Assembly (NCBI RefSeq): GCF_030684315.1 | Contig: NC_081370.1 | Span: 34,428,728-34,492,727 of the forward strand | DNA from: Stegostoma tigrinum | Lineage: Eukaryota | Direction of reading: 5' to 3' | Length of the DNA stretch: 64,000 bases | Part shown: positions 4,006-63,650 of the stretch, piece after piece | How the letters are laid out: each line of letters starts with the position of its first letter | How positions within the stretch are numbered: the stretch's first letter is position 1 | Notes under the pieces: model-generated | Database searches by the model: none | Seen by the model: the letters and a program-made list of their open reading frames with translations, nothing else | What the model was told of the DNA's origin: nothing | Position numbers and translations under genes: made by a program

Positions 4006-4179
4006 CAATAATATTTCAAAATGGTTATTATCAATCATATAGCTTATAGTTGTGAATAACTAAAATTTTAGATTTGTTGTAACCTCATTCCGTAGCTGTA
4101 CTACCTTTAAAATTCCTGATTTATTATAGAAACTTGCAATATTCTATTGTGTCTAACAATATATTTTCTGTTACTACAG

Positions 4180-11330: not shown

Positions 11331-11364
11331 GCCTGATGAACAATTTCTTGTTGTTTCCAAACAG

Positions 11365-14968: not shown

Positions 14969-15055
14969 GCCTCCCATGAAGCGCTGGTGTTATGTCCCGC
15001 TTTCTATTTATCTGTTTAGGTTTCCTTGGGTTGGTGATGTCATTTTCTGTTCTTT

Positions 15056-22885: not shown

Positions 22886-22897
22886 GAAAGTGAAACT
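22886..22897 (+). promoter_or_regulatory. ISRE / IRF-binding element GAAAGTGAAACT
   Basis: Exact match to GAAANNGAAACT (reverse strand AGTTTCACTTTC), about 95 nt upstream of the ATG. Confidence 0.7.
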
Positions 22898-22990: not shown

Positions 22991-23063
22991 ATGGGCCCGG
23001 TGAGGAGCTCGCTGCCGCCTCTGGTCCCGGTGTTAGCACTGCTGACCCTGGTACCGCACTCAG
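22991..23063 (+). CDS. Gene B exon 1: signal peptide [24 protein letters not shown]
   Basis: Strong Kozak context gggccATGg, hydrophobic core, phase-1 donor TCAG|gtaaag, located in a CpG-rich island. Confidence 0.85.
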
Positions 23064-29000: not shown

Positions 29001-32000
29001 GTAGACAGGATTGTGAAGAAGGCGTATGGTATGCTTGCCTTTATTGGTCAGTGCTTTGAATATAGGAGTTGTGGGGTTATGTTGTGCCTTTATGGAACAT
29101 CGGTTAGGTCACTTTTGGAATACTGCATGCAATTCTGGTCTCCCTCCGACATGAAGGATGTTGTGAAACTTGAAAGGGTTCAGAAAAGGTTTAGAAGGTT
29201 GTTGTCAGGGTTGGAGAGTTTGAGCTATAGGCAGAAGCTAAAGGGGCTGGGGCTATTTTCCCTGGAGCATCAGAGGCTGAGGGGTGACCTTTGTAGAGGT
29301 TTGTAAAATCATGAGGGGAGTGGATATGGTGAATAGCCAAGGATTTTTCCCCGCAGTGGTGGGGTGGGGGGGGGGGGGGGGGGTGTCCAAAAGCAGAGGG
29401 CACAGGTTTAAGGTGAGAGGAGAAAGATTGAAAAGGGGCCTAAGGGGCGACTTGTTTACACAGAGGGTAGTGCTTGTATGGAATGAGATGCCAGAGAAAG
29501 TGGTGGAGGCTGCTACAATAAATAACATTTAAAAGACTTCTGGATAGGTATATGAAAAGGAAGGGTTTAGAGGGATATGGGCCAAATGCTGGCAAGTGGG
29601 ACTAGTTTAATTTAGGATATCTAGTTGGCATGGACGCTTTGGAGTGAAGGGTCTGCTTCCATGCTGTACAACCCTATGATTCGAAGTAATGTTCCTATGT
29701 TATTTTCTTCAACGGCAACACCTTGGCTACTGGAACTGCCTTTCAGAACAACCAGCACCTTTTTGTTTGTAGTACAAATAGTTTGAAATTGAAAATTTGT
29801 TTTGAAAGTTCAGGATAACAAGCTTCAGTAACATTATCTTTGTTGAAATTCCATACAACAGCTTGCTGTTAGGATAGTTGACTGAAATCTTGGTTAAAGA
29901 GCAATGCTTTGAGCCTCATCATAAGGAAAAAAGAGACGTGAAGAAGTTTAGGAAGGTGTTCCAGAGCTTGAAGTCTTTCCACATTAAGACATCCCTGTTG
30001 GTTGTGGGAGTGATTAAAATTACAGATGAACAAGAGTACAAGAATTGAAGTATCGAGATCTCACAGGGTTGAAAGTTCAGAGAAGGTTATAGAGATAAGG
30101 ACGCCATGGTGAGATCTGAAACTAAAGAGATCTTGCCAGACCAAGCACACAGGTTAAACTAAATAAAGGAAAAACAGGCTAGGCATGAGATGGGTTATGG
30201 GTAGCAAAATTTGGAATGTATTGAGCAAATGAGGGAGGAGAAGAAGGGATTATGTTGGTAGTGTTCGATGAAACATAGGATAAGCCACTGTCAAGCTGTT
30301 TAACTTAGTTATTTTCATGGTGTACATTCTTTCTTTGTAAGTCAAAATACATTTTAGAAAGTCTTGTTGGATGGGCACTAACAAAACAGTTTTATTTTCT
30401 TTTTAAATCTCAGAAAGCAAGGTGACATTGAAAGACAGTCCAAGTTTTGTGCAAGTAGTACGTAATGAAAATGGTCTTCTAGAATGCGAAATTGCTGAAT
30501 TCAGCGGATCCAAAATGACTCTGCAGAACTCGAGCGTTTTATGGTCTTTCACTAATGGTGCTGAAAAATCAAATGCCTTTGTCTACATTTCTGGAGTAAT
30601 AAGAGAGAAATGGAAAGAAGCAGAGCTATTGAGCAGCTCTATTACACATGGAAACATGTCGCTGTTGCTAAAAGATGTTGCTTATAAACATGCTGGACAA
30701 TACCAATGCGAAGTTTACATTCCACCAAATGATAAAGCCACTAAGACAGTAACACTTGAAGTAATAGGTAAAAAGATTTATTTGTTGTATTGTAAATCAT
30801 ACCACATTTCAGTGCATTACAATGCCTTCAGTTTAATATATTTTGACAATATGTCTTTATTGCTTTGGAAATGTAATCTTACCAAGAAAATTTTCACATG
30901 CCGTGTCTTACCACTGTCTTCAAACATAAAGTACTGTGAATGCTGGAAGTACTTAGCAGGTCAGGCAAAATCTTAGGACAAAAATAGTATTAACGTGTCA
31001 GATTGATTATCAGTCATCAAAAGTTACTTTTAAAATAACAAGTGGTTCGCTCATAGTGTGTAATACTTTTTGATTATATCCACGTACTCATTAATGATCC
31101 GGTAATGCCTGTTTTTACAAAGTTGCTATCTGAACTATCAATTCTCAACCAGATATTGAAAGTTTATTTGTATGATGCATTGTAAATTAACATTTAATGA
31201 CTGAACCAAAAGTAGCAAATTCTGTAAAGTGTTTGCATTTGTGGGGAGGGAAAATATATTTTGGTGAAGATGCCTACACAATCTGTGATTAAGAATGTAG
31301 CATTTAAAATGAAAGTTTAGAAAGCATTTTTTTTTTGCAGCTTTCATCCCAGTGGAGGTGAAAGGGAATTTTAGAGATTTTCCTTCTCCTTCACTTGCAT
31401 GCCAGGGCCATCTGTTCCTTCTGGCATATCACAACTGGTACAAGAGTAGGAATTAATAACAAATTCTTTTCACTTTTCAACTAGTCATGCAGTATTTAAG
31501 TCCCACTGCATATTTTTGAAATAGTTCCTTTATTAACTTGGGGTGTTGGTTTATTGTCTAATCTGAATGATGATACCTCCAATAATATTACATGGAACTT
31601 TTTGTTATGTTGAAGACATGTATCACGTCACCTTATAGTGTTCAGACTTCTAGGGGGGGAAATAAAAGGTCTTTTAGGTATTTCCAGGTGGTTAGAACCT
31701 CTCGGTTGCAGTAACATCCTTGTGAATATCTGTTTTTATAATATGGAAACCAGAAATAGGCACATTACTTAAAATGAGATCATAATCAGATTACATGATC
31801 AGGTTACTATGCAAATTTAACACACTTTTACAATTCTAAATTTCTAGAAATGCATTTCAGTGCTTGAGATGTGGCCTTTTAATGATTATCTGCAAGCCCC
31901 AAAACCTCTTTCTCCTCTATCCCACTTTGACTTTATCTAGCCTATATGTGACCCTATGTTATTATTATGCAATGTCATGCTTATCTGAATTCATTTCCTG

Positions 32001-35000
32001 TGTGTTAATTTGGATGCAAGTTCATTAACATATATTTTAGACACATTCTTCATTTTCTGTTTTTTTGCACTGTCATTTGCAAATTTCAAAATTGTATTTC
32101 TGGTTCCAGAGTACTAATTGCTAATATAATCAGGGCGGCACAGTGGCACAGTGGTTAGCACTGCAGCCTCACAGCGCCAGGGACCTGGGTTCAATTCCCA
32201 CCTCGGGCGACTGTCTGTGTGGAGTTTGCACATTCTCCCTGTGTCTGCGTGGGTTTCCTCTGGGTGCTCCGGTTTCCTCCCACAGTCCAAAGATGTGCAG
32301 GTTAGGTGGATTGGCCATGCTAAATTGCCCGTCGTGTTCAGTGGTGTGTGGGTTATAGGGGGATGGGTCTGGGTGGGATGCTTCAAGGGGCGGTGTGGAC
32401 TTGTTGGGCCAAAGGGCCTGTTTCCACACTGTAGGGAATCTAATTAATCTAATCAAAATTAAGAACATCGGTGGCTCCAATGCCAGCCTCTGAGAAACAC
32501 CACTTCTCACTGTTTGTCTGTCTGATCTGCAACTCCTAATCCATATGTTCTGCTAGCCACTTGGCCACCTGTGAACTTCCTATCTTAACATGAGAACCTT
32601 ATTACTTGTCCTGAAGTTCTGTGGCACTGTTTCCTTTATTGATGTTCGTCAACTGATATATTTATTTAATAGGTGCTCAGCTGTATCTTCACTATGCATA
32701 GATCCAGTCAATGCATTAGTTTTGAAGTATAGTTGCAATTATTAGTGATACTAACATACCTTTTGTATTTTGGTAGCACGACCTACAGTAATAGTGACTT
32801 CAGAAAAAACTGTGGAAGTTGGAACAGGTGGCGAGATGGCTTTAAGTTGTCAGTTAAGTGGATATTTTCCTTGTGAAAGCAATACTGAATGGCTACAGAC
32901 AACCCCAGCACAAGGAAAACTGAGAGTGTTGACTGATGTTTGCATTGCCCCGCCGGTCAAAAACCCTGATGGAACGTGTAACATAAGCACTGAAGTTAGA
33001 TTAGAGCCTGGAGTAGAAGACATTGGCAGCACTTTCACATGCCGTGTCTTTCATAAGTCTTTTACAAAACCATACCAGGTAGAAGCTTTGGTGACTTTGA
33101 AAGGTGAGTTGCAATAATTTTAGCTTTTCTTTATTAAAATACTCAGTCTAAAGCATTTTGGTTAAATTAATTTAACTGTTAACTTTTCTTGTGGACATAA
33201 TCAAATGTGAAGCTTTTGGAATGGATTCGTTTGATACTGACAGGCTAGTGAAATTTTTAACTTCCTTGTATTCTTAAAATTTATTTTTACAAAACATGAA
33301 ATAAAACTCAAGTAACGTCTATAAATCTGAGCAAATTAGATTGCATGTATATTGTGATTAATAACCCTTACTTTACAGTGGTTTTGTGCATGTTATGTGT
33401 TTTAAGTACAGATAGTCCCTGAATTAGAAGACTCATATTTACAAGTGCCATCCCACATGTGGTTTTAATTTTAAAGACCCGACATGTGAACCCTTCCTGT
33501 AACAAAAGCTGCTTTCAATTGCCATCCATTATGTTCCGACTTGCAAGCAATTTGACTTGTGGACTTCAGAATGGAACACATTTGCAGCTGGGGCTTTCCT
33601 GCATTATTTGTGTTCAATCTAATAAATTTGACACCTGTTCCATACTAAATACCTATTTATGCCATACATGTGATTTGATGACTTTTCAGGATTCTTGCAA
33701 AAAGCTTAATTGTACGTTGTTTAATGGATTTTAATTTTCCATTTAATTGCGTTAACAAATCTTTCTGGTGGAAAGGTAGCCAACGATTGTTCCAGTACTT
33801 TGGAATCAATTTTAATGAAGATGTTTAGAGTTTAAAATTAAATATAGTATACAGCACTAAGTGAAGCCAAATGGCTGAACAATAATGTTATTAGTTGTTG
33901 ACTTGCTCGCCGAGCTGGTAAGTTTGTTCACAATTCACCATACTGTGTAACATCATCAGTGTGCCTCCGGTGAAACAACAGTGTTCTGTCACACTTGCCA
34001 TTTGCGTCTTGGTTTGTTGGGGTGGGTGGCATCACTTCCAGATTTTTTTTTTAGTGATTAGTATATGGGGTCCAGCTCGACATGTTTGTTAATGGAGTTC
34101 TGCTTTGAGTGCCAGGCTTCCAGGAATTCTCGTGCATGTCGTTCCTTGGCCACGTTGTCCCAGTCGAGTTAGTGTCCCTCTCTGTCCAAGTGTATCTCAT
34201 TTCAATACACATGAACAAAGAGGAACAGCAGTTCGACTGGGACAGTATTATCCCCCTAGGACCAGCCAAGCAACGACACGCACAAGAATTCCTGGAGGCT
34301 TGATACTCAATCCAGAACTCTGTTAACAAACATGTCGAGCTGGACCCCATGTACCAATCACTAAGAAGCCAATCCGGAAGTGATGCCACCCACCCCAACA
34401 AACCAAGACACAAATAGCAAGTGGGACAGAACACTGATGCTTCACCAGACATGCACTGATGATGTTACCTAGCATGGTGACAAAATGTTTGCAAACAAAC
34501 TTACCAGCTCGGTGAGCAAGTTGACAACCCAAGCTACAAATCTTCTCAAAAACCTTGAATACTGTTCGTATTTATAACCACGTTAACTTTCTCCCATTTT
34601 TATCTACCTTTGCTCATCCTTTTAAGTATATATTTTCTTAGTTTTTTCAACTATGTACTTGTCTAGTTGCCTGTGTTATCTGTCTCACTTGCTGTGGCAG
34701 AGAGTTCCTCACTTCAACTACTTTCTTGACTGAAGAAATTTTATTTATTTTCTCATTCGATTTATTAGTCACTTCCTTTGTACTTGTGGTTCTTAGTTTT
34801 CAACCCTCCTACATGTGAAAATATTGTTTCCATTTCTACCTTGTCCGAACAACTTATAATTTTAAACATCTCTTTAAGGCCACTTGTAAGTATTTGTTTT
34901 TTGAAAGGTGAAGATCCCAACCTATTCAATCTTTTCTCAATTAATGTGATCTCAGTTCTGTTACCATGCTTGTAAACATACTTCACACTTTGAATGGTAC

Positions 35001-38000
35001 TTCTATATCCTTTTTTGTAATAGGCTACCAGAGCTATGCATTCTGCATGCAGCCTGACCAGGTTCCTATACACATTTAACAAGTGTATCACCTCTCAAAC
35101 CAATCCCATGGTTTACCTGACACATTTAATAGTTTTGTTCCCATGCTGCTTTCATTGATTTGTTCACCTATTTCACTGGATCCCTTTGTACTTTCACTGC
35201 ATTTAAAAGAAATAAACTACAGGTGACATTTCTGTATTTTTGTTCAATTGAGTTCATTACGTTTATTGATGTCAGGTAACAATCAGCTGTTCAGGTTTTC
35301 AGATTTGATGTTCTGTTGCATTTTTTTTAGTGTCAGCTAAGCTTACTGTTTTATATCACTTGCAAATTTTGATTTGAAGTTCCTTATTCCTCAGCCTAAA
35401 GCATCAGTTTTCTTGCAAATGCATTCACAAAATGTGAGTGTGCAGGCTGTTTACTGCCCATCCCTTTAAAATGGTGGTGAGCTGCCTTCTGAAATCCCTG
35501 CAGTCCATTTGTTGTAGGTGGCCCCATAATGACTTTAGGAAGGGAGGACCAAGCTTTTGAATCAGTGACATTGAAGTAATGCAAATTATGAGTAACATTG
35601 ATCCTATGTTGATTTTTGTGCAAATGCATTTCCATTAGAAAAGACCTGTTTTCCGAGTATTACAACTGGATTTAAAACAATGAGATGTGCATGTGTAAAA
35701 ATTAGAACCTTGTTTTTGTGCATATTAATTGGATTGCTCAGAACTGAGGTAAGTATTTCTCTATTATACTTCACACAATAATACAGTATTACACTAGTGG
35801 AATGATTAAAATAGCTAACTGTAAGAAATATGTAACTTTTCTTTTGCAGAAGCAGAAATTCATTTGTCCAAAGCTTCAATAATCGGAAGCATTATTGGGA
35901 GCATCATTACTTCTGTTCTTGTACTCGGACTAGGAATTTATTTCTATATGCGATTCTATTATAAAGGTAAAGCCACATTCTGGGTCTTGTGCGCTACTTC
36001 AGACACTTTGGGGGATAAACTGGAGCAAATTGACTCAAAGGAAATAAAATGTGAGGCTGGATGAACACAGCAGGCCAAGCAGCATCTCAGGAGCACAAAA
36101 GCTGACGTTTCGGGCCTGGACCCTTCATCAGAGAGGGGGATGGGGGGAGGGAACTGGAATAAATAGGGAGAGAGGGGGAGGCGGACCGAAGATGGAGAGT
36201 AAAGAAGATAGGTGGCGAGGGTGTAGGTGGGGAGGTAGGGAGGGGATAGGTCAGTCCAGGGAAGACGGACAGGTCAAGGAGGTGGGATGAGGTTAGTAGG
36301 TAGCTGGGGGTGCGGCTTGGGGTGGGAGGAAGGGATGGGTGAGAGGAAGAACCGGTTAGGGAGGCGGAGACAGGTTGGATTGGTTTTGGGATGCAGTGGG
36401 TGGGGGGGAAGAGCTGGGCTGGTTGTGTGGTGCAGTGGGGGGAGGGGATGAACTGGGCTGGTTTAGGGATGCAGTGGGGGAAGGGGAGATTTTGAAACTG
36501 GTGAAGTCCACATTGATACCATATGGCTGCAGGGTTCCCAGGCGGAATATGAGTTGCTGTTCCTGCAACCTTCGGGTGGCATCATTGTGGCAGTGCAGGA
36601 GGCCCATGATGGACATGTCATCAAGAGAATGGGAGGGGGAGTGGAAATGGTTTGCGACTGGGAGGTGCAGTTGTTTGTTGCGAACTGAGCGGAGGTGTTC
36701 TGCAAAGCGGTCCCCAAGCCTCCGCTTGGTTTCCCCAATGTAGAGAAAGCCGCACCGGGTACAGTGGATGCAGTATATCACATTGGCAGATGTGCAGGTG
36801 AACCTCTGCTTAATGTGGAATGTCATCTTGGGGCCTGGGATGGGGGTGAGGGAGGAGGTGTGGGGACAAGTGTAGCATTTCCTGCGGTTGCAGGGGAAGG
36901 TGCCGGGTGTGGTGGGGTTGGAGGGCAGTGTGGAGCGAACAAGGGAGTCACGGAGAGAGTGGTCTCTCCGGAAAACAGACAGGGGTGGGGATGGAAAAAT
37001 GTCTTGGGTGGTGGGGTCGGATTGTAAATGGCGGAAGTGTCGGAGGATAATGCGTTGTATCCGGAGGTTGGTAGGGTGGTGTGTGAGAACGAGGGGGATC
37101 CTCTTGGGGCGGTTGTGGCGGGGGCGGGGTGTGAGGGATGTGTCGCGGGAAATGCGGGAGACGCGGTCAAGGGCGTTCTCAATCACCGTGGGGGGGAAGT
37201 TGCGGTCCTTAAAGAACTTGGACATCTGGGATGTGCGGGAGTGGAATGTCTTATCGTGGGAGCAGATGCGGCGGAGGCGGAGGAATTGGGAATAGGGGAT
37301 GGAATTTTTGCAGGAGGGTGGGTGGGAGGAGGTGTATTCTAGGTAGCTGTGGGAGTCGGTGGGCTTGAAATGGACATCAGTTACAAGCCCACTTCCTACA
37401 GACTAAGGGGGTGGCCATGGGCACCCGCATGGGCCCCAGAATCTGGACTCCATTTTCTCCCCTTTGGTCCAGGAACTCCCCACCTATGTCCGTGACACCA
37501 CCCACGCCCTCCACCTCCTCCAGGACTTCCAATTCCCTGGCCCCCAACACCTCATATTCACCATGGACGTCCAGTCCCTGTACACCTGCATTCCGCATGG
37601 AGATGGCCTCAAGGCCCTCCGCTTCTTCCTGTCCCGCAGGCCCGACCAGGCCCCCTCCACCGACACTCTCATCCGCCTAGCGGAACTCGTCCTCACACTC
37701 AACAACTTCTCTTTTGACTCCTCCCACTTCCTACAGACTAAGGGGGTGGCCATGGGCACCCGCATGGGCCCCAGCTATGCCTGCCTCTTTGTAGGTTACG
37801 TGGAACAGTCCATCTTCCGCACCTACACAGGCCCCAAACCCCACCTCTTCCTCCGGTACATTGATGACTGTATTGGCGCCGCCTCTTGCTCCCCAGAGGA
37901 GCTCGAACAGTTCATCCACTTCACCAACACCTTCCACCCCAACCTTCAGTTCACCTGGGCCATCTCCAGCACATCCCTCACCTTCCTGGACCTCTCAGTC

Positions 38001-47000: not shown

Positions 47001-50000
47001 TGCTTCCTACTGCTCCCATGTTGCAAACTGGGCTCTGGGTGACATGATGTTTGTTACGTTTTGCCTTTCCTGAATTTGGAATGGCATTTTTACCATGCCT
47101 CCAAATTAGTACAACTGAAAGACAGACAAGAACTCCAGCATGGGTTAGGATGGAGAGCAGACCACTTGAATGATTTCCAAAGAGCTCTAGAAAGGCTGAA
47201 AATAAATGGTCACAACACTGTTTTGATTGCATGTGTTTTGGTGAAAAATGTATGGCTTTTAAAGAAAAACTAATGTTTAGAAGTTCTGTATAATTAAAAA
47301 TGTCTTTTGTTCTTTTCCCTCTTCAGTTCCTCCTAAGTTGGCTCGCATAATTAAGCCGCCTGTGGTGCTGCACAACAGTTCTGTGATGCTGACTTGTCCA
47401 ATAATTTGTTTCAAGCCACGGCCTGTAAAGATCACATGGTATAAAAATGTGCATGGACAGAAAACCCCTTTGCTGGTTTTAGACAATGCAAATGAAAAAA
47501 ATATTTTTCCGGATAAATATTCCCATTATATGAGAAGATTTAATTATTCTGACTGCACTGTCAGTGTCTACAGCACAATACGTTTTAATGCAACAATCCA
47601 AGAAGAAGATAAAAGTCAGTACTTCTGTGCAGTTGAACACATTGGCTTAACCAATCCAGTAGAGGAACAGGTTCAACTTGATGTAAAAGGTAACACATTG
47701 AACACTTAGTTAAAGACAAAATTTCAGTTTCTCTTAAAATGTGGGATCATATTTCCTCTTTCTCTCAGGGTCATGAGTTGGTGGAATTCTCTTCCACAGT
47801 GGAGGCAAGGTCCTTGAATATTTCTAAGGCAAAGTTACACAGATTCTTGACTGACAAGGGAGTCAAAAGGGTATGGGAATGTGGGGAAAGCAGAGTTGAG
47901 ATCACAACAGATTAGCAATGATCTTAAGAAATGACAGAGCAGATTCTCGGGGCTGATTGGTATACTGTGGCTCCTAATTCATGTTTCTTTTTATCAATGT
48001 GAAGAATTTCAATACTAGAAAACAGCACAAATTTCCATTCTAGGATTAAGCACTTCCAAGTTTTCAGTTGAGAGTTTGTGACCAGCTATTGTAATCTGGC
48101 AATTTCTTAAATTAGTTATCTGTCATGTCCCCTCTGGGTGAAATTATTCAGTGCGTCAGCTTTAGATCCGTGTTCACTAAAAATTGCATTGAGATAACTT
48201 CAAGTTTGCTCATGTAGGATACCTGTTAGACATTAAAATGAGTTACATTAATCCTAACATTTTGAATGTTTTGAAATCTAGTTACCAAGGATGAAAGAAT
48301 AATATGTCGAGTCATGGAGCCACAATTTGATTAAGAAGTACTCTACCTAGCCATCACTGAAAATGAGAGTTCTTCATAACAGGCAATATGTATGTGAATG
48401 TATGTATGAGGTGATGTTCTAACACTTTGTATTTTCCAGCTTTTCCTTCTCTTGATGCCATCCTAAGTGATCCTGTGAACCCTGTAATTGGAGAAATGTT
48501 GACTCTGACCTGCAGAGTGCATTCATTTTATCCTGAAAGTATTACTGTCCACTGGTTGAAAGATGATGTTATAGTGGAATCAAAAACACCTAAAACTGAT
48601 CTAAATTCAAAGCATGAGTTGCACGAATTTATCAGTTCATTTACAATTACTCCAACTGTATCAGACCTACAGAGTAAATATAAATGCCAGGTTGATCACG
48701 AGAGCCTTATGTATCCAAGATTTGCAGAATACATTCCTGAAAATTTAGGTGAGTTTATTCTTATTTAAAAGCATTTCTGCAATATAGAAATGTTTGTTTT
48801 ATTTACAAGTCAACTATATCGGTTTCACATTTCTTAAAAAGTATTCACAGAAATTAATATTGTTTCCCCGGCCAGGACACTTGAATTTAAGAGTTAGTCA
48901 GCTGTTTTTAGTGTGCAGAACAGTCACTGGAATTTAGAAGCATTTTAATGATACAGAATAGTTCGGCCACTTTGACCACCCAAATAGGTTTGTAGCATAA
49001 TTTCACTTTCCTAAAGTTATCAAGAGAGAATTCCAGCTAAGACACAAGTTATACTGATTTGCCATATTACTCATTCTATGGTAAAATTAAATCACTGTCA
49101 TCAAAATGAAATAACGTTTTAATGTTAGTGGTGTATTTTTGTGACATTATGTTCTCTAGATCACTTGTTTATGAATTTTAAACATTGAAAAGCTGCATGT
49201 AAAATATTTCAGGCAAAGAGGAAGGGGTGATAGGACAAAACCGTGTGCAAGAAAGTTTAGTTACATTGTTATACTGGTCATATTAAAGATAGAGCTAGCA
49301 TCACAGAAATGGCAGGGACGAGCGCATTACCTTATTTCTCAAAAACATCAATGAGGTTGTAGGACCACTTACAGCACGATGAATGCACAGGTTCAAGAAG
49401 GCAGCTCGGACTACTTTCTTGGGCAATTGAGAGTTCTTCCTCTCACCCATCCCTTCCTCCCACCTCCAAGCCGCACGTCCATTTCCTGCCTACTAACCTC
49501 ATCCCGCCCCCTTGACCTGTCCGTCCTCCCCGGGGTTAGTGTCATCCAGTTTCAGGTGATGTGCCAGTATCCTGGTGACAGTTCTTAGGATGATTGAGCT
49601 TCTTCCAACATTGTTTCTTTATAAGCTGAGCTATTCTGGTGCTAAAATGTAACTTTTATTTGGAAAGGAAATATTTTTTGTGAGTTTTTGTCATAATAAA
49701 CTAGCCAAGAGAATTGAGTTAACATAATATACTAAGTCTTTTTTGCATATAAATGTAATAGTATTAGTAGCCCACATATTTGTTGCTTTCCAATTACTAA
49801 ATTGAATAAATTTAAAATAGACTGTTGCATAATTTTTGATACTGATGTCTGAAATTAAAACCAGAAAAATGTATTTCTTAATATTTTTCTTGATTTTAGT
49901 GTCCCATCCTACAGTATCTGAAATTACATGCAGTCCTGACATCCCTGAAGTAGAGAAAGAGTTGACTTTAACCTGTACTATAAGTGACTATTATCCAAAT

Positions 50001-53000
50001 GATATTCAAGTTGAATGGTTCAGAAATGAGGTGAGAATTAACAGTAATGTAAGCCATGAAAAAATTGAGGAACAATCATCCTGTAAAGATGGTCTGCACA
50101 GCAAAGTCACCATGGTAACTTTAACACCGAGTACAGATGATCATCAAGCTGAATATAGAGTCGAAGTTTGCCATTCAAAATCTTCAACCAAACCAATTAA
50201 GAAGAACTTCCAGTTAACCCTTAAAGGTGAGTTAAAAGTATTCTGTTTGATTAAATGAAATAAGACTGTAAGACAAAGGAGTAGAAGTAGGCCGTTCACC
50301 CTATTGAGTCTGTTCTACCGTTGCATCAGATTGATGTGATAATCCTCAAATCCACGTTACTGCCTTTGCCCCATAACCCTTAATTCCTTGCTGATTAAAA
50401 TTCTGCCTAACTCAGTCTTGAATATACGTCATGACCAAGATTCAATAGCCCTCTCTGGTAAAGAATTCCACAGAATCGCTGCCCTCGGAAGAAATTGATG
50501 TTTAAAGGTTATGCTCTCCTGTGCTGTGCACTCCCACAAGGTGAAACAGCCTTTGGCATCTGCCCAGTCAAGTCCCATATGATTCTTCAATGTTTTAATA
50601 AGGTCGTCTCTCGTTCTCCTATATTTTAACAATCACAGGTCCAATTTATTTAATCTCTTCTCTTAAGGTAGACCCTCTATACCTGGTATCAGCCCAGTGA
50701 ACCTTTTCTGGATCGTCTCTAATGCAAGTACATCTTTCTTTAGATAAGAAGCACAAAACTGTTCACAGTATCCCAGCAGTGGTCTGACTCATGCTGTGTA
50801 TAGTTTTAGCAAAATCTTCACACTTTCATACTCCATTCCCTTTGAAGTGAAGGCAGACATTCCATTTGCTTTCTCTATTACCCCCAAACTTGGATGCTAA
50901 TTTTTTGGGATTCACGGACAAGGTCTCGCAAAACCCTCTCTGTTCTATAGCTTTCTGCAGTCTTTCTCCATTAAAATAATATTCACTACCTCTATTCCTC
51001 CTGCATAACCTCTTATTTCCCCATATTATATTCCACCTACTAAGTTAGTATCCTACTCGCTTAACTTGTCTATATCCCTCTGCAGACTCTGTTTTCCTCA
51101 CCATTTGCCTTCCCATCAATTTTGTGTGAGCTGCCAGCTTGACTGTAGTATAAACATGTATCTCATCCAAGTCATTAAAATATATTTTAAGTAATTGCGG
51201 CCTCAGCACTTATCCCTGTGGCACACCACTGGTTAGAGGTTGCCATTCTGAAAGTGACCTCTTATCCAATACTGTCTTCTTTTTAGATGGTCAATCCTTT
51301 GTCCGTATTAATATGCCACTTCTAAAATCATGGGCTGTTATTCAGTAGATGTGGTACCTCATCAAATGCCTTCTGAAAGTAAAAATATTTTATACCCACT
51401 GCTTCTGTTTTTTCCTTCTCCTGCTTATTTCTCATCCAATAGTTACACTAAATTTTGTCAGACATGATTTTCCCCATCAGGAAACTGTGTGGACTCTGCT
51501 TGATCGTATTATATATTTTAAATGTTTTGCTATCACATCCTTTATTATAAATGTTTATAATACATGTTCTCAATTATAGATGTGAAGCTAGCTATCTCCT
51601 TCCCTTTCGAAACAAAGTTGTTTTCTAATCCTCTGGGACTTATGAAGAGGTTTAATTGAACTGCACTTGAAATGCTAAAACATTTTAATTGTACCGTTAT
51701 ATATTTCTGTCCCTTTCTTTGTTCTGAATAAGAATAACTGAATTCGTCACAGGTAATTGTTTTTAATTAATGTTATTGTGAAGTTGGTGACATGGTGGTT
51801 AGCACTGCCGCCTCACAGCACCAGGGTTCTGGGTTTGATTCCCTTGTTGGGCGACTGTGCAAACTCCACACTGATATTCTTCCCGTGTCTGCGTGGATTT
51901 CCTCCCACAGAGATGTACGTGGTAATTAATGCTAAATTACCCATAAGTGTCCAGTGATGTGCAGCTTGGTGGATTATCCATGGAAAATGCAGGGTTACAG
52001 AGCTAGGGTAGGGGTGTGGGTCTGAGTAGGCTGATCTTCAGAGGGTCGGTCTGGATTCGGTGGACCGAATAGCCGTTTCCACATTATAGAGATCCTGTGA
52101 TTCCAAGTATCCTAATCATGCAACAGTTAGTCAATGTTAGTAACTTTTTCTGCTTTGCTTTTGGCTTGTGAAGGTGAGCAAAGTATGTATGAACAAGGAA
52201 AGGTTTGCTTACTTCTGACTGGTATGTTTAATGCCCAATATGAAGTGAAAATCTTACCATGACTTCTTATAATGCAATGGCATTGTCATCATTGCCATCA
52301 GGGACGCCAAGAGACAATACCAGACTAACCGTATGAACACATGTCAACTGTGGGCAATATTTATATGATCTAACAGGCTTCAAAGCAAAGTCTAATAGAA
52401 TCGCCGACAACAGTGCATCCCTCCCCGATGAGCTCAATGCATTCTACGCTTGTTTTGAACAGAGGCTCAGTGAAATGATGTCACCTGTCCCAACAGCTTC
52501 AGGTGCACAGGTACGTATAGTCACCACCTCGGGCATCAGATCAGCTTTCTTGAGGATGAACCCTCAGAAAGTGACTGACTGGGATAGAGTCCCTGGCTGT
52601 GCACTCAGATCAGCTTTCTTGAGGATGAACCCTCAGAAAGTGACTGACTGGGATAGAGTCCCTGGCTGTGCACTCAGATCAGCTTTCTTGAGGATGAACC
52701 CTCAGAAAGTGACTGACTGGGATAGAGTCCCTGGCTGTGCACTCAGATCAGCTTTCTTGAGGATGAACCCTCAGAAAGTGACTGACTGGGATAGAGTCCC
52801 TGGCTGTGCACTCAGATCAGCTTTCTTGAGGATGAACCCTCAGAAAGTGACTGACTGGGATAGAGTCCCTGGCTGTGCACTCAGATCAGCTTTCTTGAGG
52901 ATGAACCCTCAGAAAGTGACTGACTGGGATAGAGTCCCTGGCTGTGCACTCAGATCAGCTTTCTTGAGGATGAACCCTCAGAAAGTGACTGACTGGGATA

Positions 53001-56000: not shown

Positions 56001-58240
56001 GGCAGGGAGGAGTGACCTACTTTTGGCTTTGTGGATCTGTTAAATCTTTCATTTTCTCTCTGCATATAGGCTCACCCAAATTTTCAGTGTTCGTGATGGA
56101 GCCGGAGAACCCTTCGTATGGAAAGGACTTATCTGTGTCCTGTTCAGTTTCTGGAATTTCCCATCCAAATGTGACAGTTGAATGGTATAAAGCGTCTCAG
56201 TTAATTCACAATGGAGTCACAAAAACAAAGCCTATACTTACCTCAGAAAACACTTACAAGGTAGATGCTCGTCTGAAATTTTTTGTGACTGCAGAAGACT
56301 TTGAAGGAGAATTATTCCTTCAGTATAAAGACAATGATAAAGGTGATACGTTTAAACGAGATATTCACCTGCCCCTCCAAGGTGAGTGGATCTTGTGCCC
56401 TGATGTTTACATATGTTTAGAACATCCTAATTTGGTTAATAATTTCTGTAAAAACAAAAGACACTGCATCAAAGACACTGCTCTCTATCTTACCAAGTAG
56501 TGAACGAACAGGTTAATAAAGTGTGAAGCTGGATGAACACAGCAGGCCAAGTAGCATCTCAGGAGCACAAAAGCTGACGTTTCGGGCCTAGACCCTTCAT
56601 CAGAGAGGGGGATGGGGAGTGTCCCCGCCTCCCTAACCTGTTCTTCCTTTCACCTATCCCTTCCTCCCACCTCAAGCCGCACCTCCATTTCCTACCTACT
56701 AACTTTATCCCGCCTCCTTGACCTGTCCGTCTTCCCTGGACTGACCTATCCCCTCCCTACCTCCCCACCTATACTCTCCTCTCCACCTATCTTCTTTTCT
56801 CCATCTTCGGTCCGCCTCCCCCTCGCTCCCTATTTATTCCAGAACCCTCTCCCCATCCCCCTCTCTGATGAAGGGTCTAGGCCCGAAACGTCAGCTTTTG
56901 TGCTCCTGAGATGCTGCTTGGCCTGCTGTGTTCATCCAGCTCCACACTTTGTTATCTTGGATTCTCCAGCATCTGCAGTTCCCATTATCACAGCAAACGG
57001 AGAGCCTGTTCAATTGAACAGATTGAAGGACTGTCACCAGCGCATGCTGACAGCAAAGTGCAAGTTTTATTTAAAAAAGGAAATATAATTCGAATAAATC
57101 ATACAAGAAATACAAACAAAGGTTTAGGCAGAAATAAAGGATTAACATAAAAGATGTGAAGATAGAAAACTGGTTTCAAAAAAAAATCTGCACTACTAAT
57201 TTTATTTTGAGAAAAATGAAACTCCGAACTTGTAAAATTATCAGTGTCAGATATAATACTGAGTGGTGACTACCACTTTGTATATTATTCAGTAATTCCT
57301 GATTAAAAATGGATGAAAATGTTGGCTTGTGAGAAGTTTTTTATACATTCATTGGATGTGGGTGCCAATGCATCTGTTAACCCATCTGTAATTGCCCAGC
57401 AGCCAGTTGAGAGTTAACCACGCTGCTGTGGGTCTGGAGTCACATGTAGGCTGGACTGGGTAAGGTAGGGATGACAGAAGGAGGAAAGAATGGTGGATAA
57501 TTAGCTCAGCATATGGGATGACAGTGATTTATGTGCAGATTAGCAAAGATTACACCAGTGCAGTCTGTGGAGGGGTGCCAGCATCTTCCAGATTTCCCTA
57601 TTAGACATGCGTGGACATCAGGAATTGCTGACATTTTATGTGTGACAGTGAGCAACAACATCCTTACTTATTATTACAACATAAGCTATTGTTTGAAGAC
57701 AGAGGCATTTGCTTTATCAGATCAATGGAAGTTGCTTAGTACGAGTTGAAACTAGCTTTTCTATATACTTGGATTGTAAACATATGATACTACTTAACAT
57801 AACTATTTAACTTGAGCAGTTACTAAAAAATCATTTAAGACTTTAATAACATAAATATAAATTTATTTAAATGGTCTCTGGTTACAGTTGGAATCTTTGA
57901 AAACTTACATTTTGTTTTGGCATTTCTCATAGCTGTGACTCCTGAAGTGTCAGAAATAGAATGTCAACCTGCTTATCCCAGAAAGGGTGAAAGGGCTATT
58001 CTTTATTGCAAGATCGACCATTTTTGTCCCGTGGATATACTGGTTGTTTGGAGCAAGGGATGGACAGAATGCAAGGATGAGAAAAACACAGAAACGCCCA
58101 AAATCAATGAGAAGGGGCTTTACTCTACAGTGACACATTTGCCTATTGACGTAGTTGAAGGCAGAACAGAGTACATTTGCGAAGTTCGGCACCTTAAAAC
58201 TAATGATATCGTAGAGAAGACATACGTTCTGCACGTTTAG
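22991..58240 (+). CDS. NCR3LG1: Gene B, spliced: B7-H6/NCR3LG1-like type I membrane protein with six post-TM C1-set Ig domains, 969 aa; join(22991..23063,30414..30767,32777..33103,35850..35966,40868..41287,47327..47689,48440..48748,49900..50226,56070..56381,57933..58240)
   Basis: All nine introns are GT-AG and phase 1. The CDS totals 2910 nt with no internal stop. V and C1 motifs resemble human B7-H6 as recalled (G.ASL..AGEYRCEV..P.KA.GTV.LEV; PTIKNMDGTFNVTS..ED.G..Y.C.V.H.S). The symbol denotes likeness; orthology is unproven. Confidence 0.75.
23753..25063. mobile_element. Fold-back Penelope-like element in gene B intron 1 (- arm to about 24597, + arm after)
   Basis: GIY-YIG C-terminal coding remnant on the - strand, complete 3' ends at both extremities, internal ~40-bp G-rich tandem units. 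Confidence 0.88.
26080..26965 (-). mobile_element. CR1 fragment containing a mini fold-back PLE (26522-26755)
   Basis: Inverted CR1 3' region; 11-bp TSD cttcttcacta at 26511-26521 and 26756-26766. Confidence 0.75.
27199..27383. mobile_element. Mini fold-back PLE with 13-bp TSD
   Basis: TSD agttcattatgta at 27186-27198 and 27384-27396; inverted arms agataacaag..gaaagctgacgttt / aaacgtcagctttc..cttgttatct. Confidence 0.82.
27535..29685 (+). mobile_element. CR1 LINE interrupted by a PLE 3' portion (about 27704-28615)
   Basis: [16 protein letters not shown] before the insert and VPQGSVLG after it; the insert encodes a GIY-YIG motif (LYIGETK). Confidence 0.85.
30414..30767 (+). CDS. Gene B exon 2: V-set Ig domain (B7 family)
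   Basis: Branch point cactaac, acceptor tctcag|AA, donor ATAG|gtaaaa; 354 nt. [37 protein letters not shown]. Confidence 0.92.
32133..32455 (+). mobile_element. HE1-type tRNA-derived SINE, well preserved
   Basis: A box TGGCACAGTGG, B box GGTTCAATTCC, CR1-derived 3' end aagggcctgtttccacactgtaggga, (taatc)n tail. Confidence 0.9.
32777..33103 (+). CDS. Gene B exon 3: extracellular C1-set Ig domain (B7-H6/tapasin type)
   Basis: Acceptor tttggtag|CA, donor AAAG|gtgagt; 327 nt. [38 protein letters not shown]. Confidence 0.92.
33890..34560. mobile_element. Fold-back PLE of the same family as 14851-15055
   Basis: Inverted arms gttgacttgctcgccgagctggtaagtttg / caaacttaccagctcggtgagcaagttgacaac; endonuclease-end remnant (HAQEFLEA); degenerate hammerhead near 34455-34495. 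Confidence 0.75.
35850..35966 (+). CDS. Gene B exon 4: transmembrane helix
   Basis: Acceptor ttttcttttgcag|AA, donor AAAG|gtaaag; 117 nt, phase 1-1. [39 protein letters not shown]: about 25 uncharged residues followed by aromatic and basic residues. Confidence 0.88.
37464..39320 (+). CDS. PLE reverse transcriptase plus GIY-YIG endonuclease, 5'-truncated, no internal stops
   Basis: [27 protein letters not shown], CxxC motifs, [25 protein letters not shown]. Confidence 0.85.
   Translation: MVQELPTYVRDTTHALHLLQDFQFPGPQHLIFTMDVQSLYTCIPHGDGLKALRFFLSRRPDQAPSTDTLIRLAELVLTLNNFSFDSSHFLQTKGVAMGTRMGPSYACLFVGYVEQSIFRTYTGPKPHLFLRYIDDCIGAASCSPEELEQFIHFTNTFHPNLQFTWAISSTSLTFLDLSVSISGNQLVTDVHFKPTDSHSYLEYTSSHPPSCKNSIPYSQFLRLRRICSHDKTFHSRTSQMSKFFKDRNFPPTVIENALDRVSRISRDTSLTPRPRHNRPKRIPLVLTHHPTNLRIQRIILRHFRHLQSDPTTQDIFPSPPLSVFRRDHSLRDSLVRSTLPSNPTTPGTFPCNRRKCYTCPHTSSLTPIPGPKMTFHIKQRFTCTSANVIYCIHCTRCGFLYIGETKRRLGDRFAEHLRSVRNKQLHLPVANHFHSPSHSLDDMSIMGLLHCHNDATRRLQEQQLIFRLGTLQPYGINVDFTSFKISPSPTASLNQPSSSPPPTAPHNQPSSSPPTHCIPKPIQPVSASLTGSSSHPSLPPTPSRTPSYLLTSSHLLDLSVFPGLTYPLPTSPPTPSPPIFFTLHLRSASPSLPIYSSSLPPSPSLMKGPGPKRQLLCS
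39274..39305 (+). ncRNA. Minimal hammerhead ribozyme motif of the PLE 3' repeat (representative copy)
   Basis: CU CUGAUGA A GGGU ccag GCCC GAAAC GUC AG; related copies near 2955, 24934, 28522, 56865, 63564 (+) and 23852, 36102, 56574 (-). Confidence 0.65.
40868..41287 (+). CDS. Gene B exon 5: post-TM C1-set domain 1, with a long charged insertion
   Basis: Acceptor ttcctag|TT, donor GGAA|gtaagt; 420 nt. [32 protein letters not shown]. Confidence 0.9.
41906..43494 (+). mobile_element. Young 5'-truncated CR1 LINE with a 495-aa open RT frame
   Basis: [42 protein letters not shown] (catalytic DD altered); (ttctatg)n tail. Confidence 0.92.
44205..44490 (+). mobile_element. 3' fragment of a Rex1/Babar-like LINE
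   Basis: Matches about 55045-55375; ends gtgacaataataaatcaaatcaaat. Confidence 0.7.
44968..45328 (+). mobile_element. HE1-type SINE
   Basis: Homologous to 32133-32455; inserted into the old CR1. Confidence 0.85.
47327..47689 (+). CDS. Gene B exon 6: post-TM C1-set domain 2
   Basis: Acceptor ccctcttcag|TT, donor AAAG|gtaaca; 363 nt. [24 protein letters not shown]. Confidence 0.9.
48440..48748 (+). CDS. Gene B exon 7: post-TM C1-set domain 3
   Basis: Acceptor attttccag|CT, donor TTAG|gtgagt; 309 nt. [27 protein letters not shown]. Confidence 0.92.
49900..50226 (+). CDS. Gene B exon 8: post-TM C1-set domain 4 (F-strand Cys replaced by Val)
   Basis: Acceptor gattttag|TG, donor AAAG|gtgagt; 327 nt. 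[27 protein letters not shown]. Confidence 0.9.
50260..51600 (-). mobile_element. Degraded CR1 LINE
   Basis: Inverted CR1 3' tail at 50260-50400 and inverted RT remnants (tatccctgtggcacaccact). Confidence 0.7.
51785..52105 (+). mobile_element. HE1-type SINE, degenerate
   Basis: gtggttagcactgccgcctcacagcaccaggg.. head and CR1-like tail. Confidence 0.75.
52290..55378 (+). mobile_element. Degraded Rex1/Babar-like LINE
   Basis: [26 protein letters not shown] and KFADDT remnants with frameshifts; tail catgtgacaacaataaatcaaatca. Clade assignment is from recalled motifs. Confidence 0.7.
52538..54055 (+). repeat. Perfect tandem array of 22 x 69 bp
   Basis: Unit agatcagctttcttgaggatgaaccctcagaaagtgactgactgggatagagtccctggctgtgcactc; 1518 = 22 x 69; bounded by microhomology tcagatc. 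Confidence 0.97.
56070..56381 (+). CDS. Gene B exon 9: post-TM C1-like domain 5 (F-strand Cys replaced by Leu)
   Basis: Acceptor tgcatatag|GC, donor CAAG|gtgagt; 312 nt. [32 protein letters not shown]. Confidence 0.88.
56515..56990. mobile_element. Fold-back PLE 3' end in gene B intron 9
   Basis: 56515-56619 is the reverse complement of about 56848-56953. Confidence 0.85.
57933..58240 (+). CDS. Gene B exon 10: post-TM C1-set domain 6 and stop codon
   Basis: Acceptor tttctcatag|[42 protein letters not shown]. Confidence 0.9.
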
Positions 58241-63200: not shown

Positions 63201-63650
63201 TCAATGTGGACTTCACCAGCTTCAAAATCTTCCCACCAATGACCTCACCCAAGACCAGCCCAGCTTGCCTCGCCTCATTGACCTGTTTGTCTTTTCTCCC
63301 AACTATCCCCTCCTCCCAACTCACTGACCAATCCCCACCTACTAGCCTCATTCCTGCCTCCTTGACCTATCCATCTTCCTTCCCACCCACCCACCCTCTC
63401 TCCCAACTGACCAACTCCCTACCTACACTCACCTTCACTGGCTCCATCCCCACCTCCTTGACCTGTCTGACTTCTCTCCACCTATCTGCTCCTTAATCCA
63501 CCTTCCATCATTGCCTCCCCCCCCCTCTCTATTTATGTCAGAGTCCCCTCCCCCTCTGCCATTTCTGAAGAAGGGTGCAGACCCGCAACGTCAGCTTTCC
63601 TTCTCTGATGCTGCTTGGCCTGTTGTGTTCATCCAGCCCTACACCTGTTA
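60266..63650 (+). mobile_element. Longer, frameshifted Penelope-like element
   Basis: IKPTDEGGAVVVW, LPKIHKP, TMDIQSLY, QTKGVAIG and GIY-YIG remnants spread over several frames; 3' repeat with a degenerate hammerhead near 63564. Confidence 0.88.

What the first reader, a model, noticed from the sequence alone, without database searches (positions are those of the whole stretch)
22991..58240. B7-H6-like surface protein with six C1-set Ig domains on the cytoplasmic side of the membrane
Seen: signal peptide, V, C1 and TM exons are followed in frame (all phase 1) by six further C1-set exons. There is no second signal peptide, CpG promoter or second hydrophobic segment, and the TM exon ends in a donor rather than a stop. 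Known: C1-set domains are characteristic of extracellular or luminal adaptive-immune proteins (Ig, TCR, MHC, B2M, tapasin, SIRP, B7-H6). Intracellular Ig folds are usually I-set (titin-like) or other types, and the human B7-H6 tail has no Ig domains. Inference: about 680 of 969 residues form a cytosolic C1 array, possibly a scaffold, sensor or decoy coupled to an NKp30-type ligand ectodomain. I cannot exclude that this architecture is already reported for amphibian or shark B7H6-like genes.
Basis: partly seen in the sequence, partly recalled or inferred. Interest (0 to 1): 0.92.

Follow-up and report, generated by a model that had tools for sequence, protein, structure and literature searches.

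The report
B7-H6-like protein with intracellular Ig array
This zebra-shark gene is real, transcribed and conserved from sharks to amphibians, and it encodes a B7-H6-like surface protein whose long tail behind the membrane anchor consists of six antibody-constant-type (C1) domains that most likely sit inside the cell, a location not described for this domain type in the papers I could search.

Summary
All ten phase-1 exons (leader, V, C1, TM, six C1-set) have good splice sites. Their translations are 100% identical to RefSeq XP_059508049.1 (Stegostoma tigrinum LOC125459500, 969 aa, "uncharacterized").

The TM exon is spliced directly to the first post-TM exon in single spliced contigs of a close relative, probably whale shark, in three studies.

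Orthologues of 941-974 aa with the same V-C1-TM-6xC1 plan occur in at least 13 other chondrichthyans and in caecilians and newts. A wider family with 2-14 post-TM domains reaches chimaera, bichirs, coelacanth, lungfish and frogs.

A cytoplasmic array is supported by:
- one signal peptide and one TM;
- twice as many K+R residues on the C-terminal flank of the TM;
- the canonical Ig disulfide kept in 93% of pre-TM domains and 74/74 control extracellular domains, but only 49% of post-TM domains;
- three glycosylation sites shared by sharks and amphibians in the ectodomain, none behind the TM.

The array is as conserved as the ectodomain.

Caveats: topology is inferred, not measured. TM-skipped (secreted) isoforms are modelled for the caecilian orthologue and a shark paralogue. 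Function is unknown.

The scan reached the same reading on a paralogue 38 kb upstream (s1-881473). I found no paper describing this architecture.

The parts
22886..22897 (+). ISRE-type motif GAAAGTGAAACT about 95 nt upstream of the ATG (candidate interferon-response element in the proximal promoter)
   Evidence: There are 5 matches to the 11-mer core in the window against 2.1 expected, so the position, not the count, makes it notable. Function not tested.
22991..23063 (+). Exon 1: start codon and signal peptide ([24 protein letters not shown]), donor G|GTAAAG, phase 1
   Evidence: identical to the N-terminus of P0169.
30414..30767 (+). Exon 2: V-set Ig domain (ectodomain). Canonical Cys pair and the NMS sequon are conserved from sharks to amphibians
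   Evidence: (V-set 6e-10).
32777..33103 (+). Exon 3: membrane-proximal C1-set domain of the ectodomain, five invariant Cys in chondrichthyans
   Evidence: (human B7-H6 second-best PDB hit, 1.3e-9). The V-C1 model matches B7-H6 6yjp_C with TMt 0.86.
35850..35966 (+). Exon 4: connecting peptide, transmembrane helix and basic stop-transfer (…[31 protein letters not shown]), phase 1-1 cassette
   Evidence: (helix 267-287). It is spliced to E5 in RNA-type contigs.
36032..39375 (.). Intron 4 content: near-perfect inverted duplication of a retroelement (arms 36032-37388 and 38018-39375). No leader or other exon lies here
   Evidence: reverse-transcriptase-like ORFs. The contigs skip the whole intron.
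40868..41287 (+). Exon 5: first post-TM C1-set domain, starting 1-2 residues after the stop-transfer, with a ~35-aa K/E-rich insertion predicted to be disordered
   Evidence: (pLDDT below 50 at residues 348-370).
47327..47689 (+). Exon 6: post-TM C1-set domain 2 (Cys pair kept)
48440..48748 (+). Exon 7: post-TM C1-set domain 3 (Cys pair kept in chondrichthyans; B-strand Cys lost in salamanders)
   Evidence: (8.5e-14).
49900..50226 (+). Exon 8: post-TM C1-set domain 4. F-strand Cys is absent (…YRVEVCH…), a state shared with amphibian orthologues
56070..56381 (+). Exon 9: post-TM C1-set domain 5. F-strand Cys is lost, and the B-strand Cys is present in only 4 of 14 chondrichthyan orthologues
   Evidence: It is still confidently folded in AF2.
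57933..58240 (+). Exon 10: post-TM C1-set domain 6 and TAG stop. The protein ends with the domain, with no further tail

Best explanation
The region holds one gene, Stegostoma tigrinum LOC125459500. It encodes a 969-aa type I membrane protein.

Shown:
- The ten exons are spliced as drawn.
- The mRNA contains both the TM exon and the six following C1-set exons.
- The same plan (leader, V, C1, TM, 6 x C1, stop) is kept in orthologues from sharks, rays and chimaera to caecilians and newts, with the post-TM domains as conserved as the ectodomain.

Inferred:
- The cleaved leader and the single stop-transfer helix put V-C1 outside the cell. V-C1 is a B7-H6/NCR3LG1-like ectodomain, a likely ligand for the expanded shark NKp30-type receptors.
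- The six-domain array is then in the cytosol, starting almost flush with the inner leaflet.
- There it probably forms a stiff rod of disulfide-independent beta-sandwiches (roughly 20-25 nm from typical Ig-domain dimensions; not measured on the model). The rod would serve as a docking or oligomerisation scaffold that couples ectodomain engagement, or interferon-induced expression, to intracellular partners. No known signalling motif or enzymatic domain is present.
- A minor secreted form made by skipping the phase-1-1 TM cassette is possible.
For: Gene model:
- Splice sites and phases and Pfam C1-set on each exon.
- 100% identity to the RefSeq model.

Transcript:
- One contig joins 35848-35964 to 40866-41287 in X1, X3 and X4, from three studies.
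- Assembled contigs of 3.1-3.9 kb (skate) and 7.5 kb (salamander) encode 949-969 aa including the TM and the array.

Conservation:
- 49-71% mean identity per domain among 14 chondrichthyans.
- 33-42% between sharks and amphibians, with post-TM domains equal to or above the ectodomain.

Topology:
- A single TM.
- K+R of 4.0 on the C flank against 2.0 on the N flank, higher on the C flank in 85 proteins and lower in 10.
- Canonical Cys pair kept in 114/122 pre-TM domains, 299/616 post-TM domains and 74/74 domains of control multi-C1 proteins with a C-terminal TM.
- Single unpaired canonical Cys residues are conserved across all sampled amphibian orthologues (E5) or all salamanders (E7).
- Three ectodomain sequons are shared by sharks and amphibians, against 0 of 23 post-TM sequon columns.
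- A paralogue's post-TM units carry CI-MPR-like acidic dileucine strings (EDDSDRSLLE). Other members end in KRKR-rich acidic tails.

Fold and kinship:
- AF2 pLDDT is 80-93 for all six post-TM domains.
- The ectodomain superposes on human B7-H6 with TMt 0.86, rmsd 3.1 A, 24% identity.
- RefSeq names the Amblyraja orthologue NCR3LG1.
Against: - No experiment shows topology.
- In this orthologue group four of the six post-TM domains keep both canonical Cys in 13-14 of 14 chondrichthyans, and one sequon (HNxS in E6) is present in 11 of 14. Luminal folding would also explain both.
- Sequon density does not discriminate: control extracellular arrays are also at chance level.
- RefSeq models TM-skipped isoforms for the caecilian orthologue and a Heterodontus paralogue.
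- The runs used are only guessed to be RNA, and they come from a relative, not from Stegostoma.
- No binding partner, signalling motif or expression pattern was established.
- The homodimer test gave no verdict.
Confidence: 0.68

Rival explanations
1. The functional product is a secreted V-C1-(C1)6 glycoprotein made by skipping the phase-1-1 TM cassette, a soluble UrIg-like multi-C1 molecule. The TM-containing mRNA would then give a membrane form whose array is either tolerated or secondary.
For: Exact TM-exon-skipped isoforms are modelled in RefSeq for the caecilian orthologue (P0154) and a Heterodontus paralogue (P0158). Cys pairs are kept in 13-14 of 14 chondrichthyans in E5, E6, E7 and E10, and a sequon is present in 11 of 14 in E6. 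Secreted or membrane multi-C1 molecules (UrIg, UrIg2) exist in sharks.
Against: All RefSeq isoforms of the chondrichthyan orthologues that were read keep the TM. Three independent runs give unbranched contigs through E3-TM-E5-E6, and the skate and salamander transcripts include the TM. Half of all post-TM domains in the family have lost one or both canonical Cys, against 0 of 74 in truly extracellular arrays. No post-TM sequon is shared across clades. The TM exon itself is conserved.
Confidence: 0.15
2. Both forms are made and both matter: a membrane form with a cytosolic array and a secreted all-Ig form, switched by cassette splicing as in membrane versus secreted immunoglobulin.
For: The same evidence as for the two readings above. 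The phase-1-1 symmetry of every exon keeps the frame either way. The mixed signature (some domains keep Cys, others lose it) fits dual constraints.
Against: There is no direct evidence of the skipped form in this gene or its shark orthologues. Unpaired canonical Cys residues (E8, E9; amphibian E5, E7) would be a liability in a secreted form.
Confidence: 0.12
3. Annotation artefact: two genes (V-C1-TM and a separate C1 array) or decaying pseudo-exons wrongly chained together.
For: A cytosolic C1 array is unprecedented, and intron 4 is large and filled with a retroelement palindrome.
Against: A spliced contig bridges TM to E5. No leader lies in intron 4. ORFs are intact at constant length (941-974 aa) in more than 20 species. 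Post-TM domains are as conserved as the ectodomain. AF2 folds are confident.
Confidence: 0.02

Closest known systems
Human B7-H6 (NCR3LG1), ligand of NKp30
   Same: Leader, V, C1, TM exon order with phase-1 exons. The V-C1 model superposes on B7-H6 (6yjp_C) with TMt 0.86 and 24% identity. B7-H6 is among the best PDB sequence hits for both ectodomain exons. RefSeq names the skate orthologue NCR3LG1.
   Different: From my own knowledge, the human tail is a single non-Ig, Gag-like segment with tyrosine motifs. Here the tail is six C1-set domains and nothing else. Orthology to the mammalian gene was not tested by phylogeny or synteny. V-domain similarity is weak (E 3e-3).
Shark UrIg / UrIg2 (non-rearranging V plus multi-C1 molecules; PMC12227049)
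   Same: One V exon followed by many C1-set exons in elasmobranchs. UrIg2 V-C1-C2-C3 (9dmx) appears among sequence and fold hits.
   Different: UrIg2 has a VJ-type V and its TM/cytoplasmic exons come after all nine to eleven C domains, so the whole array is extracellular. Here the TM follows the first C1 and six C1 domains come after it. Control proteins with a C-terminal TM keep 74/74 Ig disulfides, unlike this family's post-TM domains.
Cytoskeletal intracellular Ig arrays (titin, obscurin, MyBP-C I-set domains)
   Same: Tandem, disulfide-independent Ig-fold rods in the cytosol. The titin fragment I65-I70 is the top Foldseek hit for the whole model.
   Different: Those are I-set domains in soluble muscle proteins with no signal peptide or TM. 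Here every post-TM exon scores best as C1-set and the array is tethered to a B7-type ectodomain.
Butyrophilins (B7-family V-C ectodomain, TM, cytosolic B30.2 domain)
   Same: A B7-type ectodomain coupled through one TM to a folded beta-sandwich module in the cytosol instead of a short motif tail (my own knowledge).
   Different: The cytosolic module there is PRY-SPRY, not Ig. No sequence relation was shown here.

Membership tests
Immunoglobulin C1-set domain (Pfam PF07654), for the six post-TM exons | Significant match to the C1-set profile, better than to V-, I- or C2-set | tested here: met
   C1-set is the best hit and above the gathering score (21 bits) for E5 39.8, E6 32.4, E7 52.1, E8 48.4, E9 43.3 and E10 36.5 bits.
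Immunoglobulin C1-set domain (Pfam PF07654), for the six post-TM exons | Seven-strand beta-sandwich with the canonical B-F disulfide and the C-strand Trp | tested here: inconclusive
   AF2 gives confident sandwiches for all six, and the Trp is invariant. The Cys pair is present in E5, E6, E7 and E10 but incomplete in E8 and E9. C1 versus C2 strand topology was not examined on single-domain models.
B7-H6 / NCR3LG1 | Leader, V, C1 ectodomain and single TM, with overall fold like B7-H6 | tested here: met
   (TMt 0.86, rmsd 3.1 A over 229 columns, 24% identity).
B7-H6 / NCR3LG1 | Orthology to the mammalian gene (phylogeny with other B7, tapasin and nectin V-C1 proteins; conserved synteny) | not tested
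   Only RefSeq's automatic name for the Amblyraja orthologue. Atlas neighbours are generic V-C1 proteins including tapasin-related and nectin.
B7-H6 / NCR3LG1 | Binds NKp30 (NCR3) | not testable with these tools
   No receptor sequence from this genome was in hand. Scan notes report many NKp30-like genes elsewhere in the genome; not checked.
Type I single-pass membrane protein with cytosolic C-terminus | N-terminal signal peptide, exactly one TM helix, positive-inside flanks | tested here: met
   one segment at KD 2.22; leader 1.48; helix 267-287; family K+R 2.0 outside against 4.0 inside.
Type I single-pass membrane protein with cytosolic C-terminus | Experimental topology (tag accessibility, glycan mapping, protease protection) | not testable with these tools
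   Indirect support only: relaxed disulfides and unshared sequons.
UrIg / UrIg2 | VJ-type V with split leader, all C1 domains N-terminal to the TM or secreted | tested here: not met
   The TM exon lies between C1 number 1 and C1 number 2. The V ends in …TVTLEVI, without an FGxGT J motif.

The most novel reading that the evidence does not exclude
C1-set immunoglobulin domains, regarded as a hallmark of extracellular adaptive-immune molecules, also work inside the cell. An ancient family found from sharks to amphibians tethers arrays of 2-14 cytosolic C1 domains to a B7-H6-like ectodomain, probably under interferon control. The array would be a docking platform for cytosolic partners. Candidates are Ig-binding PRY-SPRY/TRIM-type proteins, or the Ig-CARD-NACHT-LRR chimeras noted elsewhere in this genome (s1-882044, untested). 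No amniote or teleost member was seen among the hits whose source species I read (a limited sample). If amniotes did lose the array, the mammalian B7-H6 Gag-like tail would be a later replacement of it.
Probability: 0.3. Interest if true: 0.9.

Novelty: new variant of a known kind. Interest (0 to 1): 0.78.

Why it matters
C1-set domains define Ig, TCR, MHC, beta2-microglobulin, tapasin, SIRP and B7-H6, and are taught as extracellular or luminal modules.

This family has been under purifying selection for roughly 460 million years and places C1-type domains behind the membrane anchor. That would extend the domain's range to the cytosol. It would also give comparative immunologists a testable candidate for how an NK-ligand-type molecule signals inward in the cell that carries it. 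It raises the question of what the ancestral B7-H6 tail was before the mammalian Gag-like tail.

All members carry the label "uncharacterized protein" in public annotation. A handful of expression and topology experiments in shark, Xenopus or newt cells could therefore open a new chapter cheaply.

Tried and rejected
- **Homodimer test.** Complex prediction on two copies of residues 553-969 (E7-E10) gave no verdict (score 0.00, controls not run). This is no evidence either way.
- **The look-up of encoding contigs.** It was closed, so the transcript contigs behind P0172 and P0219 could not be read as DNA. Their nature as mRNA is inferred from ORF length against contig length.
- **Sequon density as a topology marker.** Pre-TM 1.29 per 100 aa against post-TM 0.65. 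It is downgraded because control extracellular multi-C1 proteins are also at chance level (obs/exp 0.95). Only cross-clade sequon conservation is kept as evidence.
- **dN/dS from the relative's contig.** In E5 there are 9 non-synonymous and 4 synonymous changes plus one in-frame codon insertion. This is too few sites to interpret, though the frame is kept.
- **Search for a cytosolic signalling domain fused after the array.** A Walker-A screen and Pfam on P0121 found only a retroelement RT fusion. No NACHT, CARD or B30.2 appeared among the 150 representatives.
- **ESM Atlas on the ectodomain.** It returned only generic V-C1 neighbours.
- **Literature.** Six full-text searches found no description of a TM followed by C1 domains. 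Flajnik et al. 2012 (PMC3709836) and Ohta and Flajnik 2015 (PMC4594805) are not held, so prior description there cannot be excluded.
- **Joined model.** I did not search with a joined translation of the window exons. Exons were searched one by one by reference, and the identical database protein P0169 was used where a full-length query was needed.
- **Rejected readings.** Separate genes, pseudo-exons, and a second hydrophobic segment or leader in intron 4.


Full report
**1. Observation**

The + strand between 22991 and 58240 carries ten exons with AG/GT boundaries, and every internal exon is in phase 1-1.

| Exon | Coordinates | Content |
|---|---|---|
| E1 | 22991-23063 | ATG and leader |
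| E2 | 30414-30767 | V |
| E3 | 32777-33103 | C1 |
| E4 | 35850-35966 | …[31 protein letters not shown], then donor G\|GTAAAG |
| E5 | 40868-41287 | C1 |
| E6 | 47327-47689 | C1 |
| E7 | 48440-48748 | C1 |
| E8 | 49900-50226 | C1 |
| E9 | 56070-56381 | C1 |
| E10 | 57933-58240 | C1, ending …YVLHV-TAG |

Pfam calls E2 V-set (6e-10). It calls E3 and each of E5-E10 C1-set as the best family, all above the gathering score. A profile built from these exons finds no further copies between the exons or on the minus strand. It does find three more C1 exons upstream on the same strand (4083-4577, 11340-11846, 12548-12859, the last ending in a stop). These are the tail of the neighbouring paralogue.

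**2. Identity of the gene**

A full HMMER scan with E5 alone found 222 representative proteins. The exon translations are 100% identical, exon by exon, to P0169. This is XP_059508049.1, "uncharacterized protein LOC125459500 [Stegostoma tigrinum]", 969 aa.

I did not search with a joined translation of my own. Exons were searched singly by reference, and P0169 served as the full-length query.

**3. Transcript evidence**

One call of read laying on window:35800-41300 showed the following.
- In three runs from three studies of "organism A", a single contig covers 35848-35964 and continues without a break at 40866-41287. This is the TM-to-E5 junction, written 2 nt further left than the exon boundaries.
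- The run of the source organism is colinear with the genome.
- The contigs are about 96-97% identical to the window. They carry an extra in-frame GAT (Asp) that the Rhincodon typus orthologue also has, so organism A is probably the whale shark.
- Contig lengths fit the model. X3 has 720 nt before the TM exon (E3 + E2 + 39 nt of E1) and 363 nt after E5 (the length of E6). X1 has 1745 nt after E5 (E6-E10 is 1619 nt, plus a presumed 3'UTR).

Caveats: the runs are only guessed to be RNA, contigs hide rare isoforms, and this is a relative, not Stegostoma.

Independent support comes from assembled contigs of 3.1-3.9 kb in a skate and 7.5 kb in a salamander. They encode 949-969-aa proteins with the TM and all six post-TM domains. 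The window gene spans 35 kb, so I take contigs this short to be spliced mRNA.

**4. Conservation**

Orthologues of 941-974 aa with the same plan occur in:
- Pristiophorus, Heterodontus, Cetorhinus, Carcharodon
- Scyliorhinus (2 species), Mustelus, Chiloscyllium (2 species), Hemiscyllium, Rhincodon
- Pristis, Mobula (2 species), Hypanus, Hemitrygon
- Amblyraja, Leucoraja, Rhinoraja, Narcine, Callorhinchus

The same plan, at 953-969 aa for full-length models, occurs in the amphibians Microcaecilia, Geotrypetes, Pleurodeles and Lissotriton; the Rhinatrema model read (isoform X2, 749 aa) is shorter.

| Domain | Mean identity among 14 chondrichthyans | Shark vs amphibian |
|---|---|---|
| V | 60% | 34% |
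| ecto-C1 | 71% | 36% |
| TM | 60% | 19% |
| E5 | 49% | 33% |
| E6 | 57% | 42% |
| E7 | 63% | 33% |
| E8 | 61% | 38% |
| E9 | 58% | 36% |
| E10 | 58% | 35% |

The array is under purifying selection at least as strong as the ectodomain.

A wider family has a single strong TM at about residue 230-350 followed by 2-14 C1-like domains. It includes further shark, ray and chimaera paralogues, bichirs, coelacanth, lungfish, frogs and newts. All are named "uncharacterized". Among the clusters whose names I read I saw no amniote or teleost, but this sample does not prove absence.

**5. Where is the array?**

P0169 has one TM-grade segment (262-280, KD 2.22) plus the leader. AF2 gives one helix, at 267-287.

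In 109 family representatives:
- The 15-residue C-terminal flank of the TM holds 4.0 K+R against 2.0 on the N-terminal flank. It is higher on the C flank in 85 proteins and lower in 10.
- The first post-TM domain starts a median of 4 residues after the TM window, and a median of 5 residues follow the last domain.

The canonical B-F cysteine pair is the sharpest signal.

| Domain set | Both canonical Cys kept |
|---|---|
| Pre-TM C1-type domains | 114 of 122 (93%) |
| Post-TM domains | 299 of 616 (49%); 164 lost both, 153 lost one |
| Control: six multi-C1 proteins from the same hit list with a C-terminal TM | 74 of 74 |

In this gene E8 lacks the F-strand Cys and E9 lacks it too, and both states are shared with amphibians. 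Amphibian E5 and salamander E7 keep one unpaired canonical Cys.

Three ectodomain sequons (at residues 105, 112 and 211) are shared by sharks and amphibians. None of the 23 post-TM sequon columns is shared.

Raw sequon density also differs (1.29 against 0.65 per 100 aa). I discount it because the extracellular controls are at chance as well.

Some paralogues carry motifs in the post-TM part that would only function on the cytosolic side. One has repeated EDDSDRSLLE strings resembling the acidic dileucine signal of the cation-independent mannose-6-phosphate receptor (a resemblance from my own knowledge). Others have KRKR-rich acidic C-termini.

Two points weigh against a cytosolic array:
- E5, E6, E7 and E10 keep both canonical Cys in 13-14 of 14 chondrichthyans, and the HNxS sequon in E6 is present in 11 of 14.
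- RefSeq models isoforms that precisely skip the TM exon in the caecilian orthologue (P0154) and in a Heterodontus paralogue (P0158). No such isoform is modelled for the chondrichthyan orthologues I read.

**6. Fold and kinship**

AF2 with 21 orthologues gives mean pLDDT 80. The six post-TM domains score 80-93, higher than the ectodomain. The 35-aa K/E-rich insert of E5 (348-370) is disordered.

Foldseek aligns the V-C1 pair on human B7-H6 in its NKp30 complex (6yjp_C) with TMt 0.86, rmsd 3.1 A and 24% identity. By sequence, B7-H6 is the second-best PDB hit for E3 (1.3e-9) and a weak full-length hit for the V (3e-3). RefSeq names the Amblyraja orthologue NCR3LG1. Orthology to mammalian B7-H6 was not tested.

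UrIg2, the known shark V plus multi-C1 gene, has its TM after all C domains. It is a different architecture.

**7. Mechanism**

Shown: one mRNA, one ORF and a conserved architecture.

Inferred (about 0.68): a type I protein with a B7-H6-like ectodomain outside the cell, and a membrane-apposed rod of six disulfide-independent C1-type domains inside it.

Proposed function (speculative): an intracellular scaffold or oligomerisation platform linked to an NK-receptor ligand. It is possibly interferon-inducible, because a GAAAGTGAAACT ISRE core lies about 95 nt upstream of the ATG.

A homodimer prediction for E7-E10 returned no verdict.

Rivals:
- A mainly secreted TM-skipped product (0.15).
- Two functional forms switched by cassette splicing (0.12).
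- An annotation artefact (0.02).

**8. Novelty**

Gene models exist in RefSeq and UniProt, but all that I read are called "uncharacterized" or "Ig-like domain-containing", except the Amblyraja orthologue, which RefSeq names NCR3LG1. Six full-text searches found no paper on a TM followed by C1 domains. Two key Flajnik/Ohta papers could not be read, so prior mention cannot be excluded.

The scan has met the same architecture on neighbouring DNA. A follow-up of s1-881473, a paralogue 38 kb upstream, reached the same reading. First-reader notes s1-881475, s1-882169 and s1-881639 describe related genes. I did not test the claim in s1-882044 of a B7-H6-like ectodomain joined to Ig-CARD-NACHT-LRR. 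If true, it would place post-TM Ig domains next to bona fide cytosolic domains.

I rate this a new variant of a known kind: a B7-type IgSF receptor with an unprecedented cytosolic C1 array. Interest is high.

Noticed in passing
window 4083-4577, 11340-11846, 12548-12859 (+): Three more C1-set exons, the last ending in a stop (…NLCLAF*). They are the 3' end of the upstream tandem paralogue and correspond to the C-terminal domains of Pristis LOC127577746 (P0007) and Heterodontus P0008. The last domain has lost its B-strand Cys but keeps the F-strand Cys.
   Followed up: partly
window 22886-22897 (+): Consensus ISRE core GAAAGTGAAACT about 95 nt upstream of the start codon, inside a short GC-rich promoter patch.
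   Followed up: partly
window 36032-37388 and 38018-39375: Intron 4 holds a 98-100% complementary inverted duplication (about 1.36-kb arms, 629-nt spacer) of a retroelement with a 618-aa RT-like ORF. It looks like a very recent palindrome and could form a large hairpin in the pre-mRNA.
   Followed up: partly
window 52536-54060: A perfect 69-bp tandem repeat, 22.1 copies at 100% match, in intron 8. It reads as an open 547-aa ORF by chance of period (69 = 23 codons).
   Followed up: partly
window 58238-58246: The TAG stop of the last exon is followed at once by a near-consensus donor (TAG|GTATGT). The Carcharodon orthologue has an isoform with a 14-aa C-terminal extension, so alternative 3' ends may exist.
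   Followed up: no
window 14992-17556 and 41906-43393 (+), 60877-63500 (+): Several LINE/RT-type retroelement ORFs in the intergenic region, in intron 5 and downstream of the gene. They give very high depth in all runs laid.
   Followed up: no
P0001 / P0156 (Heterodontus francisci paralogue): At least seven near-identical post-TM units, each a disulfide-less C1-like domain preceded by an acidic exon with EDDSDRSLLE (an acidic dileucine-like string). This suggests recent exon-pair amplification and gene conversion, as reported for UrIg2 C domains.
   Followed up: no
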